A stretch of 64,000 nt of DNA from Sminthopsis crassicaudata (GCF_048593235.1 NC_133619.1:313920454-313984453); one strand, 5' to 3'; shown: positions 27,171-43,686, counted from the first letter of the stretch. The notes: generated from the letters alone by a model not told the origin. Translations and numbers: made by a program.

Positions 27171-28640
27171 ATAAGATAATGTAAACAAGTGGAATAGGTT
27201 GAGAAGCACAGTGATGGGTACCTGGTACTGTGGGCATTCAATAAACATTTGTGGACTGATTACTTATAATCTACACAATGATACTCAATTTTATACATTC
27301 TCTAGTTTCAATAGCTGGCTATGTCTTTTTTTCATTTTCTAAACAATCCATTAAGTGTCTCCCATGTGAAGTCAGTGGATTAGATGCTGCATTTACAAAG
27401 ATGAATGCAATCCCTGACAAAAGACTGGTGGTGGAGCTGACTCAAAGATATCCAGCATAGTGGAGAGAATTAGAATGAGAGGACCTGGATTCAAATTTTC
27501 ACTCTGCCTCTTACTACTTTGGGACCCCAGTCACAGGGTAATTGATTTCGAACCAGATCCTAGATTTAAAGCCATTCTATCCAACCCCTCACATTTACAA
27601 TAGAACTGAGGTCCAGAGATTATGAATGATTTGATCTGTCACAGAGCTAATAAATATTAGATCTAGGAATAAGACCTGGGTCTTCTGGACTACAAGTCAA
27701 ATAATTTATTTTGCCATGCTCCAATAAATAATTTAATCTAAGACTTAGCTTCCTCATGTGTAAGATGATGGGGTCAGAGTAAATTATTAAAATCAAAAGT
27801 TCCTTCCATCTCTTGATCTTTGACCAATACCAATCAATAGCTTGCTGACATAACCAGTGAAAGCTGCCAGATGTGCTACAAGAGTACTTAGTTCAATTCT
27901 GGCTAACATTGTAGCACTGGGCCTATTTCTCCCCCTTTAGTCTATAGAGAGTGGTGATTGTTTTAGCAGGGTTTTTTTTTTTTTGGCCTTCATATTCTAA
28001 GCACTTAGCACAGTGCCTGGAACACAGTAGGTACTTCATAAATGTTTACTGACTAATCATGAAATAAATAATCATTGCCTACTGGGAAATCCAGGTGCTG
28101 ATGGGGTGAGTCTAGAAGTAGCCTCCAGCACAGTGATGCCCATCAGTGGGGGAAACTAAGTGTGAAATTGCCTGCTTTTAAAATCAAAGCAATTTTAAAA
28201 ACCTGAAATTATGTTTCAGAAATATCAATTTAGCTCTTTCCATATGTTGAATCTTATTAGCCACCCCAAGTCAAGTACATATTATAGTTAATACTTGAGG
28301 AATTAAGAGTACAATTATTTTGTTGAAAATCAAAGCCTCTTTGTTTTTGGGATTCTGGCCAATGTATATTGAGATGGAAAAAGACAATAAAGGGGATAAA
28401 ATTAAGAGTAGAAGGGAGAAGAAACAGAGAGAAAGAAAAAGAGAAAGAAAAGAAGTAAAGGGAGATAGAGATCATAAAATACATTTTGGGTTTTTTGGTT
28501 TGTTTTCTGGCATTCATTTAATGCTCAAACTTAAAAACATGTTTTACGATCATCATGTGAAACTTTTGAAAAATTATGACTAATACTGACTAGAATGTTA
28601 GAGCCTTGATAGTGTATTTGTCATATTATGTACATACAAC

Positions 28641-28822
28641 CTTAGTTCTATTGCAGAAAGCAAACTGCTTTCATCTCTATCATCTTTAACTGACTTCTGC
28701 ATAAACTCCATCAAGACCTCAAATCCTACTTTCTGGTCCATATCCAAACTCTTCAGACTTCCTTCTGTCTTTGAATAATTACTGACAATATCATCAGTGG
28801 CCCAATGGAGATCATGAAGAAG
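28641..28822 (-). CDS. MORC1: MORC1 linker exon LLHDLHWATDDIVSNYSKTEGSLK...DDRDESSLLSAIEL (3' boundary uncertain: 28641, 28638 or 28634)
   Basis: Acceptor aaattatag, phase 0; at least 60 open codons; TEGSLK resembles recalled human TEGCLK, and DESSLLSAIEL resembles DENTSDSDIIL. The donor choice is ambiguous (see findings). Confidence 0.75.
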
Positions 28823-37100: not shown

Positions 37101-38299
37101 CACAGCCAGGGAAATGTCTGGGGCGGGATTTGAACTCAGAAAGAAGAAACTTCCTGACTTCAGCCATGGAGCTTGGTAAATTGTACCACCTAGATATTTC
37201 CGTATTGCAATAGGATCCTCATTCCCTATATGAATGGCTGATAAGATCCCTTTTAGATAAAAAGTTCCATGGCTTTTGCTAACTTCTAAGAAACTTTCTA
37301 ACTCTAGGATTTTATGTTATCCTGAAACTAAAATAAAATAGTTTTAACATTTCACTTACTATAATTAAATCTGGGCCACTGTTATCTTCATCTTCAATTA
37401 TACCTTTAGAATCCTTACCAACCCCTTCAGGAGACTTTCTTTTCACTTTCCAAGAAGATACCTACAAAATGCATTAAAACAAATATAAAAGAATTTTTCA
37501 CTTTTATGCTTTTTTCCTATGGCGCAGATGCCAATTACACAGCTGTCATTTGAGTCATTTATTTCTTTTTTCAGCAAATAGGCACTGTGTGCCTCTTAGG
37601 TGTATGATATTCAAGATACTCTATTAGATGTAAAGAAGGGTAATCTAGTCCTTACCCCTTAAGGAGTTCAAAATCTTGTTGAGAAGACAATACTTAACCA
37701 CAAAAAAGCCAAGTAACAATAAAAGATGATACTATCTTAACTGTTGCATGGCAGCGCACACTAAATTATAAATGAATAGTGTGAAAAGTATTAAGAATTC
37801 AGATGAAGGAGATGACCAATAAAACACCTTTCAACTTTAGCATCTAATGGGAAAAGTGTGAGACATGAAGCCAGGAGAGATTTGTGTTTGAATTTCATTT
37901 TGAAAACTTAGTAGCTTTGTGAATATAGGTAAGACATTTTCTTTTCTCAGATTCAGGCTCCTCCTATATAAAATGGGTGCAATAATATTTTGCAACACCT
38001 GCATCATAGATGTTGTTAGGATAAAATGAGATTTTTTTAAAAGCATGTAAAGCAGTTTGAAAGCTTTAAAGTGTAATTTAATATCATTGGTGATGATGAT
38101 GAAGAAAAAGAGGAAAAGTTTCATGATGAAAGTATAATTTGAGCAAAGCCATGAAGGGGATAAGATGAAAAGAAGCAGAACAGAAGAGGGAATTTCAGGC
38201 AGTAAGAATAATTAAGCAAAGATTTGGAAATGGGAACTAACTCAAGACACTGAGAGGATGGTAAATAGGTAGTAACTACAACTAGGTCTTTGGATGTCA

Positions 38300-38825
38300 T
38301 GGAATAGAGAGAAATGGAGGAGGATGAAGAAAGGGAAGAAAACAGAAGATAAAGGAAGAGAATAAAAATAAGTAGAAAAGGAAAAGGAAAGGTAGAGGAA
38401 GAGAAGGAAAAAGGAAGAAAAAAGGAGAAAATGAGGGAAGAAAGAAGAGAAAAGAAAAAGAGAAAAAAGATGAAGAAAAGGAAGTAGAAGAGGAGGAGGA
38501 AGAGGAGAAGAAAAAAGAAGAAAAATAAGAGGTATAGAAGGACAAGGAGAAAAAAGAAGAAAAGGAAGGGAGGGAAAGGAGGAATGAGAAGAAAGGAGGA
38601 AAAAGAGGAGAGAGAAGGAGAGGGAAAAAAGAAGTAAAAGGAAGAAGATAAGGAAAAAGAGGAAGGGGAAGAGAGGAGGAAAAAAGGAGATAGAGAAGGA
38701 GGAGATAAAGGAGAAATAGTAGAAGAAGAGAGGAGAAAGAAGAGAGGAGGAAGAGGAAGAAAAAGGAGGAAGAAGGAAGAGAGAAAGAGGAAGCGGAAAA
38801 GGAAGTAGGAGAGAAGAGGAGGAGG
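38300..38825. repeat. ~520-bp polypurine (GA-rich) low-complexity tract
   Basis: Almost only A and G on the + strand; explains ORF 38297-38830. Confidence 0.95.
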
Positions 38826-39946
38826 CTCACAGTAATAAAGTACTTTAAGATTTATAATATCTCACTTGACTCTTTTAACAACTTTATGAGGATAGTGCCA
38901 TTATTATCCCTGTTTTACAGATAAGGAAACTGAGCCTGGGAAAGGTTTAGGATCATACAAATAGTGTTTAAAACTGGATTTCAGTTTAGGTGTTCTTGAC
39001 CCCAGGCCCAGCCCACACCTAAAGAGCATGAACTTGATCTTCCTCTATACTGGGGAAGCTTTCTGACCAGAATGACATGATGAAATATTGTTTCAGGAAA
39101 GATTAGCTGATTAATTAAGTTAATTTCCTAAAGTGCATAATTCAGGATTTATATTAGATTTTTAAATTCATTGCACAATTTTCTTGTAGCATATATGCCT
39201 TTCTATTACAATAATCACTCACTTTAATGTCACATTTTGAAGTTTACAAATCACATTCTTTATAATAATCTTGTGACATAAGTCATGCAAATATTATCAT
39301 CATCTGACAGATGAGAAAATTGAGATTCAGAGCAGTGGGATCATTTGCCTATGGTCACACAGCTAGTAAATATTAGAGCATGTATGCAAACCATTCCTTG
39401 ACATCCTACTAATCCTAATTTTACTTTGCTTAGATTAATGTCACAATTAATTTTAATTTCTCTATCACACTGTGGTAGTGAAGAAGGTGCCTGGAGTTAT
39501 AGTCACTGACTAGGAAAGTAAAAAAAAATCACCAGATACTTCATAAATCAGATATTCTGCACAAAAGTCATTAAGAATTGGCACTACTTCAATTAAGATC
39601 TGAGTAAAATTAAGTTAATTTGTCAAATGATATTAAATAGTCTAACTATCACAAGTTATACCTCATTTCCATATTTTCAACAGTAAAAGATCTGTTTTTA
39701 GAAGAAATAGGCTGATAAATGTTTCAATGAGTATTTATTGATTTTTAAAATTCAATTTTATTTTATTTTCAGCTCTGCATTCTTTTTACCTCCATCTCTG
39801 CTACTCCTTCTCTAGCCTCCTCCCATTGCAATTGAGAAAGAAAGAAAAATCACGTATAGTCCAACAAAACAAATTTCCACACTGGCTATATCCAAATAAT
39901 ATAAATATTTATGTACATGTGCTGATTGAACTAAGTTCACTCACTG

Positions 39947-40385
39947 CATTTTTGAAAATAATTTTTTTCAATTAATGAAAATGTGATTTCTTTCCCTCTC
40001 AATTCCTTCTCTTTAAAAATAAAAAAAAAATCTTTATTAAAAATTATAAATAATCAAGCAAAAAAATTCTCATAATGCCCATGTCTAAAAAATATGTTTT
40101 CATCTATCCTCTGAGGTGAGAAGCATGTTTCAATGAGTCCTCTGAATTTATGGTGAGTCATATTTATCAGATTTCTTGAGGCTTTTAAAAATATTTACCT
40201 TTACACTATTATTTCAATAAGTATTTATTAAGTACTTACAATGTTCCAAATACACCGGAAAGTGCTAGAAACACAAAGATTAAAAAAAAGAAAACAGGTC
40301 TTGTTCTTTACTAAGTTAAATTTGCTTCTATGGCATATACTATCTAAGCCTATGTATTTGAAGTATAGGATAAATTGATCAGAAG
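39947..40385 (+). repeat. Arm 1 of a near-identical inverted duplication (partner 42143-42579)
   Basis: e.g. gcctatgtatttgaagtatagga at ~40348 versus tcctatacttcaaatacataggc at ~42157; colinear over ~440 bp. Confidence 0.95.
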
Positions 40386-40467
40386 ATTTGTGTTTCAGTT
40401 CCACCTCTGACACTTAGTAGCAGTGTGAAACTGAACAAAGCATCTACTTTCTTTGAACATGTGTTAA

Positions 40468-40770
40468 CTGATTTGTCCCTTCCACATCTAGGGGATTAGG
40501 GCTGTGGTACTCCTACTTTCCAGGATCTGGAAAATCTCTAAAAATTTTTGTCCCTCCCTTTGTAACAGAGAAGAAATCTGAATCTTTTTTTTTCCCCCCA
40601 CTTGATTGTGAAATTTGGTTATAGGCCAAATTGTTGCCTTCTGGCTTTTACATGTCATTTGCAGCTTCTGTAAAAATTCTCCAAAAATTCCAATGTAATT
40701 TCTTATGCTAACTTATGATATATCAAAACTACAATGAGGAAAGTTGGAATGGAAGAGATAACTGTACTTA
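40468..40770. mobile_element. Probable Tigger/mariner-type MITE
   Basis: Left end ttgtcccttccacatc and right end gaatggaagagataactgta form degenerate terminal inverted repeats ending in TA. Confidence 0.55.
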
Positions 40771-42142
40771 CACTATTTACTTCATCATCTTATCAGTGTT
40801 CTTATTCAAGAATCTTATCAGTGGTTTTTGTTCATTTTTGTTTTTAGAAAAAAGATTCATGAAACTTAAAGTGCTAGATAGAGATGAACTGTCTTTAGAA
40901 GACATGTACACAAATAGCTCTCACAAAATAGAAAATTAAAAATAAAATTAAAAAACTGAGGTATTCTGCTCGAGGAATTACAATATTCAAAAAAAGCTTT
41001 AAAAAACATTATGAGTAATAGTATCATTGCAGGGGAAATGTTTAACCAATCAATTAAAAAGCATTATTAAAATAAATTGAAAGCACACTCACTATGTGCC
41101 AAGCATTGTAACTGGCAAGTATAATTACACTAACCCAAGGTAATTATTTTAAAAGACAACTTTCATTTGAAGGTCTTTCCTAGAAAGTTGTTTCTTCCTA
41201 CCAACCTGTTTTTCCCCAGAGGATCTCAATTATCACAGTATTTAAGAGTTGTGAGGGATCTCACTAAAATTCCCTCTACAGTGGTTTCCAATAAGTGGTT
41301 ACTTTGCCTTTGCTTAAAGATCACTAATAAAAGAGAATTTACTACTTTCCCAGAAAGTCAATTGTATTTTAAAAATTTTGTTTTTCAGGTAAAAAAAAAT
41401 ATCAAATTTCTTTTCCTCTCACTCCTTTTCTTAAAAAAAGGAAATAGAAACTAAACCCTTATGGCAAATATATGTGGTCAAATAGTGTAAATACTTTTAT
41501 TGGCTACGTCCTAAAAATAAGTATATGTCTCAATCTATAGACTGAAATTTCATTATCTTTCTGTCAGGAGGGTAACATGTTTCATCATGAAGAATTGTGA
41601 TTGAACTTTGCACTGATCAGAATTCTTAAGTCTTTGAAAAGTTGTTGGTCTTTACAGTCTTGTTATTGTATTAATTAATCCTCTGGTCCAACTTACTTTA
41701 TTCTCTAACAGTTCATATAACACTTTCCAGGCTTCTCTGAAACTACCCTGTTCATAATTTCTTAGGTCACAAAATAATTTGCTCTCATTATGTCAGAGAC
41801 CATAAACTCACTGCATTTTTAGATAGCTCCAATCTTTTAGATATTTTTTCATACAATATCATTTTCTCCTTCATATGTTCTGCCCAACTATTCCTATTTC
41901 TTCCCTCCGAAATGAAGCAGAATAAATTTCTCTTCCAGGTGCACTAACAATTAGCAAAATTCTGTGTGCTTTTTTCTGAAAATTATCTGATCACTATTAT
42001 TAAAAACACAACTAATTTTCATATGAAGTCATGGATTGTTGAAGTAATGGTTTTTGTTGTTTTTTTTTCCCCCTTAATTACGTCATGAGATAGAATGAAT
42101 GAAACTACTAAAAAAATGCATCTTTCAAGATAACAATTAAAA

Positions 42143-42668
42143 ATCTGGCCAATTAATCCTATACTTCAAATACATAGGCTTAGATAAGTATATGCCATAG
42201 AAGCAAATTTAACTTAGTAAAGAACAAGACCTGTTTTCTTTTTTTTAATCTTTGTGTTTCTAGCACTTTCCGGTATATTTGGAACATTGTAAGTACTTAA
42301 TAAATACTTATTGAAATAATAGTGTAAAGGTAAATATTTTAAAAGCCTCAAGAAATCTGATAAATATGACTCACCATAAATTCAGAGGACTCATTGAAAC
42401 ATGCTTCTCACCTCAGAGGATAGATGAAAACATATTTTTTTAGACATGGCCATTATGAGAATTTTTTTTGCTTGACTATTTATAATTTTAATACAGGTTT
42501 TTTTTATTTTTAAAGAGAAGGAATTGAGAGGGAAAGAAATCACATTTTCATTAATTGAAAAAAATTATTTTCAAAAATGGCTATGTCCAAATAATATAAA
42601 TATTTATGTACATGGCTGACTGAACTAAGTTCACTCACTGCATTTTTGAAAATAATTTTTTTCAATTA
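42143..42668 (-). repeat. Arm 2 of the inverted duplication (42143-42579) followed by a direct copy of 39884-39974 (42579-42668)
   Basis: Reverse complement of 39947-40385, then ggctatgtccaaataatataaatatttatgtacatg...cactgcatttttgaaaataattttt. Confidence 0.95.
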
Positions 42669-42711
42669 TGATTTCCTTGTGTGTCTAGTAAACTGGCACT
42701 GAAGGGAATTC

Positions 42712-42829
42712 CTAAAGATTTCTTTTTTTTAAGCTTTTTTATTATAGGTTTTTATTTACAAGATATATGCATGGGTCATTTTACAGCATTGACAATTGCC
42801 AAACCTTTTGTTCCAATCTAAAGATTTCT
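42712..42829 (-). mobile_element. Severely 5'-truncated L1 (~94 bp of 3' end) with 12-bp TSD
   Basis: TSD ctaaagatttct at 42712-42723 and 42818-42829 flanks ttttttattatagg...atatgcatgggtcatttt...aaaccttttgttccaa. Confidence 0.85.
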
Positions 42830-43449
42830 AAAGAAAGAAAAAAGCAGAGGCAGCACTGTTGCAATAGGTATACATTCTCTCACAGTAATTACTTTAAAAG
42901 GAACCACATTCATTTGAATGTACAAATTCTAGTAACAAAAAAATCAATTTCATCACTTTACAGTCCTACCACATTATCAATAATATAATCTACTTCCACC
43001 TATAATTTTTAATTTTGAGTAAATGGAAATTGTGTAAGATTTGGCCCAGAATCTCTCCCCGAATAAAGCATTCAATACAACACTCCAGAATATGTGATGC
43101 CCCAAGTTTGTCACCTATACTTTTCTTCTTTATATAAATTATCTCTAAAAATACATGGTCTTTTCAAGAGGAGATCTTTCAAATAGTGTGAACTCACCAC
43201 ATAATCTACTGAAAATAACAATCAGAATAATTTTTTTGTTTGTTTTTTGAGAGTTTTCTGTGAGAATTCAGGAAAAAAAGAAATCAAGACCTTTTGCTAG
43301 ACATTATAAATTGTAATTTGTATTCCATGGCTAAAAATCTTGGAGAAAAAGAAAAAAGTTAAAATGAAATACAACTTTTGCTCAAATGCTACTTCAGAAA
43401 GTAATACATCTTGTACAAATTTTAAGAATGAAAAAATAAAATACCACAC

Positions 43450-43686
43450 CTGGGAATGCTCATTAATTTTGGTATTTTCCAAATGTCTTCTTGGTTCTTT
43501 CACTTTCACTTTCTTCCTAACATTTGTCTGTGGAATTTTATCTTCTGAAACATAACTTGGAGTTGAGACTGATTTTGATCTTCTCCTTTTGTGGCTCAAA
43601 TGTCTGGCCCAAACCACTGAGGAGGAGTTGGCATCTCGTTCCGAAGCATCTCTTTGAGGCACAAATGTCCTGGACTTGGCATATTC
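43450..43686 (-). CDS. MORC1: MORC1 linker exon EYAKSRTFVPQ...HKRRRSKSVSTPSYVSEDKIP...NTKINEHSQ
   Basis: Branch-like ttctaat plus acceptor tgttatttaag, donor CAG|gtgtgg; 237 nt, open, phase 0 to 0; basic KRRR stretch; ends in SQ like the recalled human counterpart. Confidence 0.85.

What the first reader, a model, noticed from the sequence alone, without database searches (positions are those of the whole stretch)
39884..42668. Young complex inverted duplication predicted to form a ~440-bp dsRNA stem in MORC1 pre-mRNA
Seen: 42143-42579 is the near-identical reverse complement of 39947-40385 with only scattered differences, separated by ~1.75 kb. It is followed at once by a direct copy of 39884-39974. 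The arms span the same junction between old L1-like and L2-like fragments, so this is local copying, not two independent insertions. Established: inverted-plus-direct mosaics are typical of replication template switching (FoSTeS/MMBIR), and long intronic inverted repeats are ADAR substrates and can affect splicing or circularisation. Inference: a transposon-silencing germline gene may produce a long hairpin made of TE-derived sequence, a possible source of edited RNA or endo-siRNA.
Basis: partly seen in the sequence, partly recalled or inferred. Interest (0 to 1): 0.7.

Follow-up and report, generated by a model that had tools for sequence, protein, structure and literature searches.

The report
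Inverted duplication scar in MORC1 intron
A 6-kb intron of a marsupial MORC1 gene carries a real, fairly recent DNA copying accident: about 440 bases copied backwards plus 90 bases copied forwards, which could fold into a long RNA duplex, though nothing found here shows it does anything.

Summary
Bases 39947-40383 and 42144-42579 are inverted copies (425 of 440 columns identical, 96.6%) around a 1,760-nt spacer. The right arm runs straight into a direct copy of 39884-39974 at 42580-42668.

The arms have no other copy in the window. Each carries the same junction of two old, unrelated interspersed repeats, so this is local copying. The left copy is the source and the 526-nt right block is the derived mosaic. 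There is no target-site duplication and no poly(A). One junction shows 2 nt of microhomology. This fits fold-back or template-switch repair.

The gene is MORC1-like and lies on the minus strand. The whole structure sits in one 5,988-nt phase-0 GT-AG intron and brackets no exon.

Folding the pre-mRNA sense predicts 428 inter-arm pairs, with perfect helices up to 150 bp. That puts it in the known rare class of long, highly paired intronic dsRNA.

Editing, small RNAs and read-level support for the assembly could not be tested. Earlier notes of this scan report similar inverted duplications elsewhere in this genome, all judged ordinary scars.

Verdict: real, most likely neutral, low interest.

The parts
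39884..39946 (.). Segment A, the source of the direct copy. Old-repeat homology runs across its left edge (39883|39884).
39947..39974 (.). Segment b, 28 nt present three times: here, inverted at 42552-42579 and direct at 42641-42668.
39947..40383 (.). Left arm, the source copy. It is an old L1-like piece followed by an old SINE/MIR-like piece.
40384..42143 (.). 1,760-nt spacer, the loop of the predicted hairpin. It has no MORC1 exon and no Rfam family.
42144..42579 (.). Right arm, the inverted copy of 39947-40383 at 96.6% identity.
42580..42668 (.). Direct copy of 39884-39974. It is joined to the inverted arm with a 2-nt (TG) microhomology. With 42552-42579 it forms a perfect 28-nt hairpin with a 61-nt loop.
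43450..43685 (-). Upstream MORC1 exon, 236 nt, with an AG acceptor and a CAG|gt donor. Its donor lies about 780 nt from the right block.
37462..43449 (-). The 5,988-nt phase-0 GT-AG intron that holds the whole structure.
37359..37461 (-). Downstream MORC1 exon, 103 nt, matched by four MORC1-like proteins.
61837..61956 (-). zf-CW exon, which fixes the gene family and the strand.

Best explanation
This is a one-off, lineage-specific complex duplication made by a DNA repair or replication error, with no function of its own. A break or stalled fork at the old boundary between the spacer and the downstream sequence (now 42143|42669) let the 3' end fold back about 1.76 kb onto its own strand. It copied 40383 down to 39947 in reverse, making the inverted arm. 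It then switched template at a 2-nt microhomology to a point 63 nt further left, copied 39884-39974 forwards, and rejoined the downstream sequence. The left copy is the source.

Because both arms lie in one MORC1 intron, the pre-mRNA can in principle form a ~430-bp, ~98% paired nuclear duplex. That duplex would be a passive ADAR substrate and would be removed with the intron.

Shown: the anatomy, the direction of copying, the intronic position and the predicted pairing. Inferred: the order of switches, an age of roughly 1-10 My, neutrality, and editing as a by-product.
For: The arms and the direct piece are equally diverged (10 substitutions in 525 nt, 1.9%), which points to a single event. 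There is no other copy in the window.

Both arms carry the same junction of two old repeat families. Old-repeat homology (39856-39902 against 40050-40095, score 20 against shuffles 10.7 +/- 2.0) crosses the left edge of A only in the left copy, so the left copy is ancestral.

The junction 42579|42580 shares TG with both templates. There is no target-site duplication and no poly(A) at the ends of the block or the arms.

The exon chain places everything in one GT-AG intron. The minimum free energy is -1066.5 kcal/mol, with 428 inter-arm pairs and helices of 150, 98 and 82 bp.

The arms differ by real substitutions and enclose a unique spacer, which argues against a technical fold-back read. 31-mers of the stretch occur in DNA runs of two samples from two studies (0.83 and 0.76 of the words).

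The mechanism class is established (PMC2621351, PMC3907307, PMC5453318).
Against: No outgroup or pre-duplication allele was seen, so the ancestral spacer|downstream join and two of the three junction microhomologies are inferred. No reads or contigs were laid across the junctions, so the assembly is not independently confirmed. The word shares cannot tell whether the second sample has the right block. Neutrality is assumed from the lack of evidence, not demonstrated. Substitutions lie somewhat closer to junctions than chance predicts (P about 0.05), which could also reflect gene conversion of an older repeat.
Confidence: 0.78

Rival explanations
1. Assembly artefact: a chimeric or fold-back read, or a mis-join, created the right block, and the animal has only the left copy.
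For: No read-level check was possible. 7 of the 15 arm differences are homopolymer-length indels, which could be sequencing noise. The second DNA sample holds slightly fewer words (0.76 against 0.83).
Against: Eight clean substitutions separate the arms. A 1.76-kb unique spacer lies between them. The block is a three-junction mosaic, not a simple palindrome. There are no N gaps within 12 kb. Technical fold-backs give near-perfect, spacer-less palindromes.
Confidence: 0.07
2. Functional hairpin: the MORC1 pre-mRNA stem is processed in germ cells into edited RNA or endo-siRNAs, or it tunes MORC1 splicing or expression, and it is kept by selection.
For: The predicted stem is long and almost perfect. 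It lies 780 nt from a 5' splice site in a germline transposon-silencing gene (PMC4268658). In humans such long, highly paired dsRNAs are depleted from genes (PMC11838218), so one inside a gene is unusual.
Against: No RNA run was found that holds the stretch. It brackets no exon. The arms are old repeat fragments only about 68-73% like the other copies seen, so small RNAs would lack targets. Mammalian Dicer is poor on long dsRNA outside rodent oocytes (PMC6391682). The stem decays by ordinary substitutions and indels, and there is no Rfam match.
Confidence: 0.05
3. Mobile element: a fold-back or long-TIR DNA transposon, or an L1 twin-priming insertion, delivered the inverted copy.
For: Two long terminal inverted arms around a 1.8-kb core resemble a TIR element. 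Twin priming produces inverted-plus-direct L1 insertions.
Against: The flanks of the arms (the 10 nt ending at 39946 and the 10 nt starting at 42580) share no target-site duplication, and neither do the flanks of the 526-nt block. There is no poly(A) or poly(T) at either end. The arms are composites of two other old repeats. There is no second copy in 64 kb. The direct piece lies upstream of the inverted piece in the source, which is the wrong order for twin priming on either strand.
Confidence: 0.03
4. Older inverted duplication kept similar by gene conversion between the arms, so its youth is only apparent.
For: The differences are uneven. Nine of 15 lie in 40021-40086 and three in the last 12 nt, while 253 nt of the core hold one substitution.
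Against: The 91-nt direct piece, a poor conversion partner, shows the same divergence (about 2%) as the arms. The clustering is only marginal (P about 0.05 for substitutions, 0.11 for all differences), and the dense patch is an A-rich slippage-prone tract.
Confidence: 0.07

Closest known systems
Fold-back / FoSTeS-MMBIR template-switch inverted duplications (PMC3907307, PMC2621351; short-range versions PMC5453318, PMC7954356)
   Same: An inverted copy sits next to its source with a kb-scale disomic spacer. The added inverted and direct local pieces form a mosaic. There is 2-nt microhomology at the readable junction, and no target-site duplication or poly(A).
   Different: The scale is intermediate (0.5 kb copied, 1.8-kb spacer), lying between clinical kb-Mb events and the <100-nt template switches described in great apes. 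It is fixed, or at least assembled, in a marsupial intron. The ancestral allele was not seen here.
Long, highly paired intramolecular dsRNAs (>300 bp, >96% paired) catalogued by dsRNAscan in human (PMC11838218)
   Same: The predicted stem has 428 pairs and about 98% of arm nucleotides paired, with a loop of about 1.8 kb. It is intronic and so would be removed by splicing. Of the 2,018 such human structures, 88% are intergenic.
   Different: Most human examples are pairs of separately inserted inverted LINEs or Alus. This one is a local duplication of old repeat fragments. Transcription and editing were not shown.
Hairpin endo-siRNA loci of mouse oocytes and ADAR-edited inverted Alu pairs (PMC7668262, PMC6391682)
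   Same: A long inverted repeat lies within one transcript.
   Different: There is no small-RNA or editing evidence. The setting is not an oocyte, and no truncated Dicer isoform is known outside rodents (from general knowledge). The arms are too diverged from other repeat copies to guide silencing in trans.
Other inverted duplications noted by this scan in the same genome (s1-189972, s1-153394, s1-173097)
   Same: They are 200-315-nt local inverted copies of old repeat or unique sequence, some in introns, and were judged template-switch scars without function.
   Different: This one is longer (437 nt) and carries an extra direct piece, which gives a readable three-junction history. Those notes are unchecked by me.

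Membership tests
Template-switch / fold-back inverted duplication | Inverted copy close to its source, single locus | tested here: met
   arms 1,760 nt apart, with no other copy in the window.
Template-switch / fold-back inverted duplication | Junctions with zero to a few nt of microhomology, not long homology | tested here: inconclusive
   Junction 42579|42580 shows 2 nt (TG) shared by both templates. The two outer junctions cannot be scored without the ancestral sequence.
Template-switch / fold-back inverted duplication | No hallmarks of transposition (target-site duplication, poly(A), terminal motifs) | tested here: met
   the flanks of the arms and of the 526-nt block share no direct repeat, and there is no A or T tail.
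Template-switch / fold-back inverted duplication | Outgroup or other allele with the un-duplicated layout | not testable with these tools
Long highly paired intramolecular dsRNA (ADAR/MDA5-type substrate) | >300 bp and >96% of nucleotides paired (criterion of PMC11838218) | tested here: met
   428 inter-arm pairs over arms of 437 and 436 nt, with helices up to 150 bp (prediction only).
Long highly paired intramolecular dsRNA (ADAR/MDA5-type substrate) | Both arms on one transcript | tested here: met
   both arms lie inside one GT-AG intron of the MORC1-like gene. Transcription itself was not shown.
Long highly paired intramolecular dsRNA (ADAR/MDA5-type substrate) | Clustered A-to-G mismatches in RNA | not testable with these tools
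Hairpin endo-siRNA locus | 21-22-nt Dicer-type small RNAs from both arms | not testable with these tools
   No small-RNA data were reachable.
circRNA / exon-skipping inverted repeat pair | Arms in different introns flanking one or more exons | tested here: not met
   no MORC1-like exon lies between 43450 and 37461, and the spacer gives only noise hits containing stop codons.
Long-TIR / fold-back DNA transposon | Target-site duplication and multiple copies | tested here: not met
   no target-site duplication and no second copy in 64 kb. A genome-wide count was not possible.
L1 twin-priming insertion | Inverted 5' part plus direct 3' part ending in poly(A), flanked by a target-site duplication | tested here: not met
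   no poly(A) and no target-site duplication. The direct piece lies upstream of the inverted piece in the source.
MORC1 (host gene) | zf-CW exon and downstream exons matching MORC1 best | tested here: met
   Pfam zf-CW, E=5e-8. The named full-length and partial hits are MORC1 of Dipodomys and Nannospalax. Colinear exon chain. The N-terminal ATPase lies outside the window.

The most novel reading that the evidence does not exclude
In male germ cells the MORC1 pre-mRNA hairpin is heavily edited or diced. Either this lowers MORC1 output (a self-limiting loop in a transposon-silencing gene) or it yields repeat-derived small RNAs that join transposon control in this marsupial lineage.
Probability: 0.04. 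Interest if true: 0.6.

Novelty: new member of a known kind. Interest (0 to 1): 0.22.

Why it matters
It is a clean, readable example of a mid-sized fold-back and template-switch event. It has three junctions, and the direction of copying is shown by the continuity of an old repeat. That makes it useful for mutation-mechanism catalogues in marsupial genomes.

It also puts a dsRNA of more than 300 bp and more than 96% paired inside a gene, a class reported as rare and depleted from genes in human. It could therefore serve as a natural probe of nuclear dsRNA handling (ADAR editing, intron turnover) in marsupial germ cells. No effect on MORC1 or on transposon control is indicated.

Tried and rejected
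- **Reads.** Only local scripts used them, and the Rfam scan was limited to 40044-42480.
- **Independent contigs.** So there were no independent contigs and no related species.
- **Weak similarity at 39830-39883.** This stretch resembles 42522-42579. I considered it as evidence of an older palindrome and rejected it as purine-rich low complexity.
- **Repeat continuity at the inner edge.** I tested whether the SINE-like repeat continues past the inner arm edge (40383|40384) using two other copies. There was no signal above shuffles, so the direction of copying rests on the left edge of A.
- **Substitutions near junctions.** The clustering is only marginal.
- **Rfam.** No family matched.
- **Spliced protein model.** A joined model was not built. 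Exons were mapped one by one.

Full report
**Observation**

The repeat finder on 39000-43500 returns a chain of inverted pairs that together cover 39947-40383 and 42144-42579. It also returns two direct families covering 39863-39974 and 42558-42668. A gapped local alignment joins the inverted pieces into one 440-column alignment with 425 identities (96.6%). There are 8 substitutions and 7 indel columns, mostly length changes in A-runs. The spacer is 1,760 nt.

The direct copy is solid from 39884 to 39974 (42580-42668), with 2 substitutions and 1 indel. The 28 nt at 39947-39974 therefore occur three times, and 42552-42579 and 42641-42668 form a perfect small hairpin. blastn of 39500-43000 against the whole window finds no other copy at E<=1e-4.

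**What the copied DNA is**

The arm is a composite of two old interspersed repeats.
- 40062-40213 is colinear with another copy in the spacer, 41513-41664 (score 33 against shuffles 15.2 +/- 2.5).
- 40201-40300 is about 68% identical to 27971-28064 and 56506-56596.

Both arms contain this same junction. The family names were not verifiable here.

**Direction and mechanism**

In the left copy, A, b and the rest of the arm are contiguous. In the right block the inverted arm is followed by A+b in direct orientation.

An old-repeat homology (39856-39902 against 40050-40095, score 20 against shuffles 10.7 +/- 2.0) crosses the left edge of A at 39883|39884. So the left A sits in its ancestral context, and the 526-nt right block (42144-42668) is derived.

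At 42579|42580 both templates share TG. Neither the arms nor the block have a target-site duplication or an A/T tail. The order of the pieces is wrong for L1 twin priming on either strand.

The simplest history has four steps:
1. A break or stalled fork occurred at the old spacer|downstream boundary.
2. The 3' end folded back about 1.76 kb onto its own strand and copied 40383 down to 39947.
3. It switched template 63 nt further left and copied 39884-39974 forwards.
4. It rejoined the downstream sequence.

This is the fold-back and FoSTeS/MMBIR class (PMC3907307, PMC2621351), intermediate in size between clinical events and short template switches (PMC5453318, PMC7954356). The order of switches is inferred.

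**Age**

There are ten substitutions in 525 nt (1.9%), and the level is the same in the inverted and direct pieces. This points to one event. With a mammalian neutral rate of about 1-2.5e-9 per site per year (general knowledge), it would be a few million years old.

Differences are uneven: 9 of 15 lie in an A-rich tract and 3 in the last 12 nt. Closeness of substitutions to junctions is only marginal (P about 0.05). Error-prone synthesis at birth and later gene conversion both remain possible, so I give a range of 1-10 My.

**Host gene**

A motif scan found a zf-CW exon on the minus strand at 61837-61956. Pfam confirms zf-CW at E=5e-8, and the best solved relatives are MORC2 and MORC3. A full-library phmmer search returned ten hits. 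The named ones are MORC1 of Dipodomys ordii and Nannospalax galili.

Local tblastn with these proteins gives a colinear minus-strand exon chain:
- 61956-61837
- 58043-57903
- 44858-44793
- 43596-43447
- 37461-37357
- 19709-19623
- 13258-13175
- 6334-6146
- 2810-2715
- 2208-2116

The exon around 43.5 kb runs 43685-43450, with an AG acceptor and a CAG|gt donor. The next exon is 37461-37359, with an AG acceptor and a gtaag donor. The two are consecutive in the protein alignments and in phase 0. The whole structure (39884-42668) therefore lies in one 5,988-nt intron. It starts about 780 nt from the 5' splice site, and the source segment A lies about 2.4 kb from the 3' splice site. No exon lies between the arms, so it cannot act as a circRNA-type flanking repeat pair.

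**Predicted RNA**

ViennaRNA on the 2,785-nt minus-sense stretch gives -1066.5 kcal/mol and 428 pairs between the arms, three of them G-U. Uninterrupted helices reach 150, 98 and 82 bp.

By the criterion of Andrews and Bass (>300 bp and >96% paired), human has 2,018 such structures, 88% of them intergenic and most unedited (PMC11838218). This one belongs to that known rare class. It is intronic, so it would be removed by splicing. If MORC1 is transcribed where ADAR is present, promiscuous editing is the expected by-product, but that is inference. No Rfam family matches the spacer or the adjoining arm parts.

**Function**

Nothing supports a function. No run on record as RNA holds the stretch. 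The one run guessed as RNA that holds 35% of the words has 1.6 billion letters of contigs and is probably DNA. The arms are only about 68-73% like the other repeat copies seen, so small RNAs from them would have few targets. Long dsRNA is a poor Dicer substrate in mammalian cells (PMC6391682). The MORC1 link to transposon silencing (PMC4268658) is a coincidence of location until shown otherwise.

**Reality of the assembly**

In favour:
- Real substitutions separate the arms.
- A unique spacer lies between them.
- The block is a three-junction mosaic.
- There are no gaps nearby.
- 31-mers of the stretch occur in DNA runs of two samples from two studies, at shares of 0.83 and 0.76.

**Earlier notes**

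The scan holds 23 notes of inverted duplications in this genome. Follow-ups on other loci judged them ordinary scars. One note names the fat-tailed dunnart. These are unchecked leads. None concerns this locus.

**Verdict**

The structure is real and is a nicely readable template-switch scar. The predicted dsRNA is a member of a known class, and function is unproven and unlikely.

Noticed in passing
window 37359-37461 (-) and 28598-28747 (-): A 103-nt exon at 37461-37359 is matched by four MORC1-like proteins and follows the 43.5-kb exon in phase 0. The 28.6-kb 'exon' named in another note on this window (s1-179225) got no tblastn hit at E<=30 with five MORC1-like proteins.
   Followed up: partly
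window 42552-42668: There is a perfect 28-nt inverted repeat with a 61-nt loop inside the derived block, created by the second template switch. It forms a small hairpin on its own.
   Followed up: partly
window 54749-55172 and 57155-57384: Two N runs (424 and 230 nt) sit inside simple-repeat-rich sequence. Both lie between the 58.0-kb and 44.8-kb exons. They were left untouched.
   Followed up: no
proteins P0001, P0002, P0010: The top phmmer hits to the CW exon include long proteins (1,292-1,583 aa) with 5-7 CW-like stretches each, of unknown origin.
   Followed up: no
run X7: A run guessed to be RNA holds 35% of the sampled words of this intronic stretch. Its 1.6 billion letters of contigs suggest low-coverage DNA rather than RNA.
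   Followed up: no
window 40021-40086: Nine of the 15 arm differences fall in this 66-nt A-rich tract, including four substitutions. This is either a local mutation hot spot or a patch that escaped gene conversion.
   Followed up: partly
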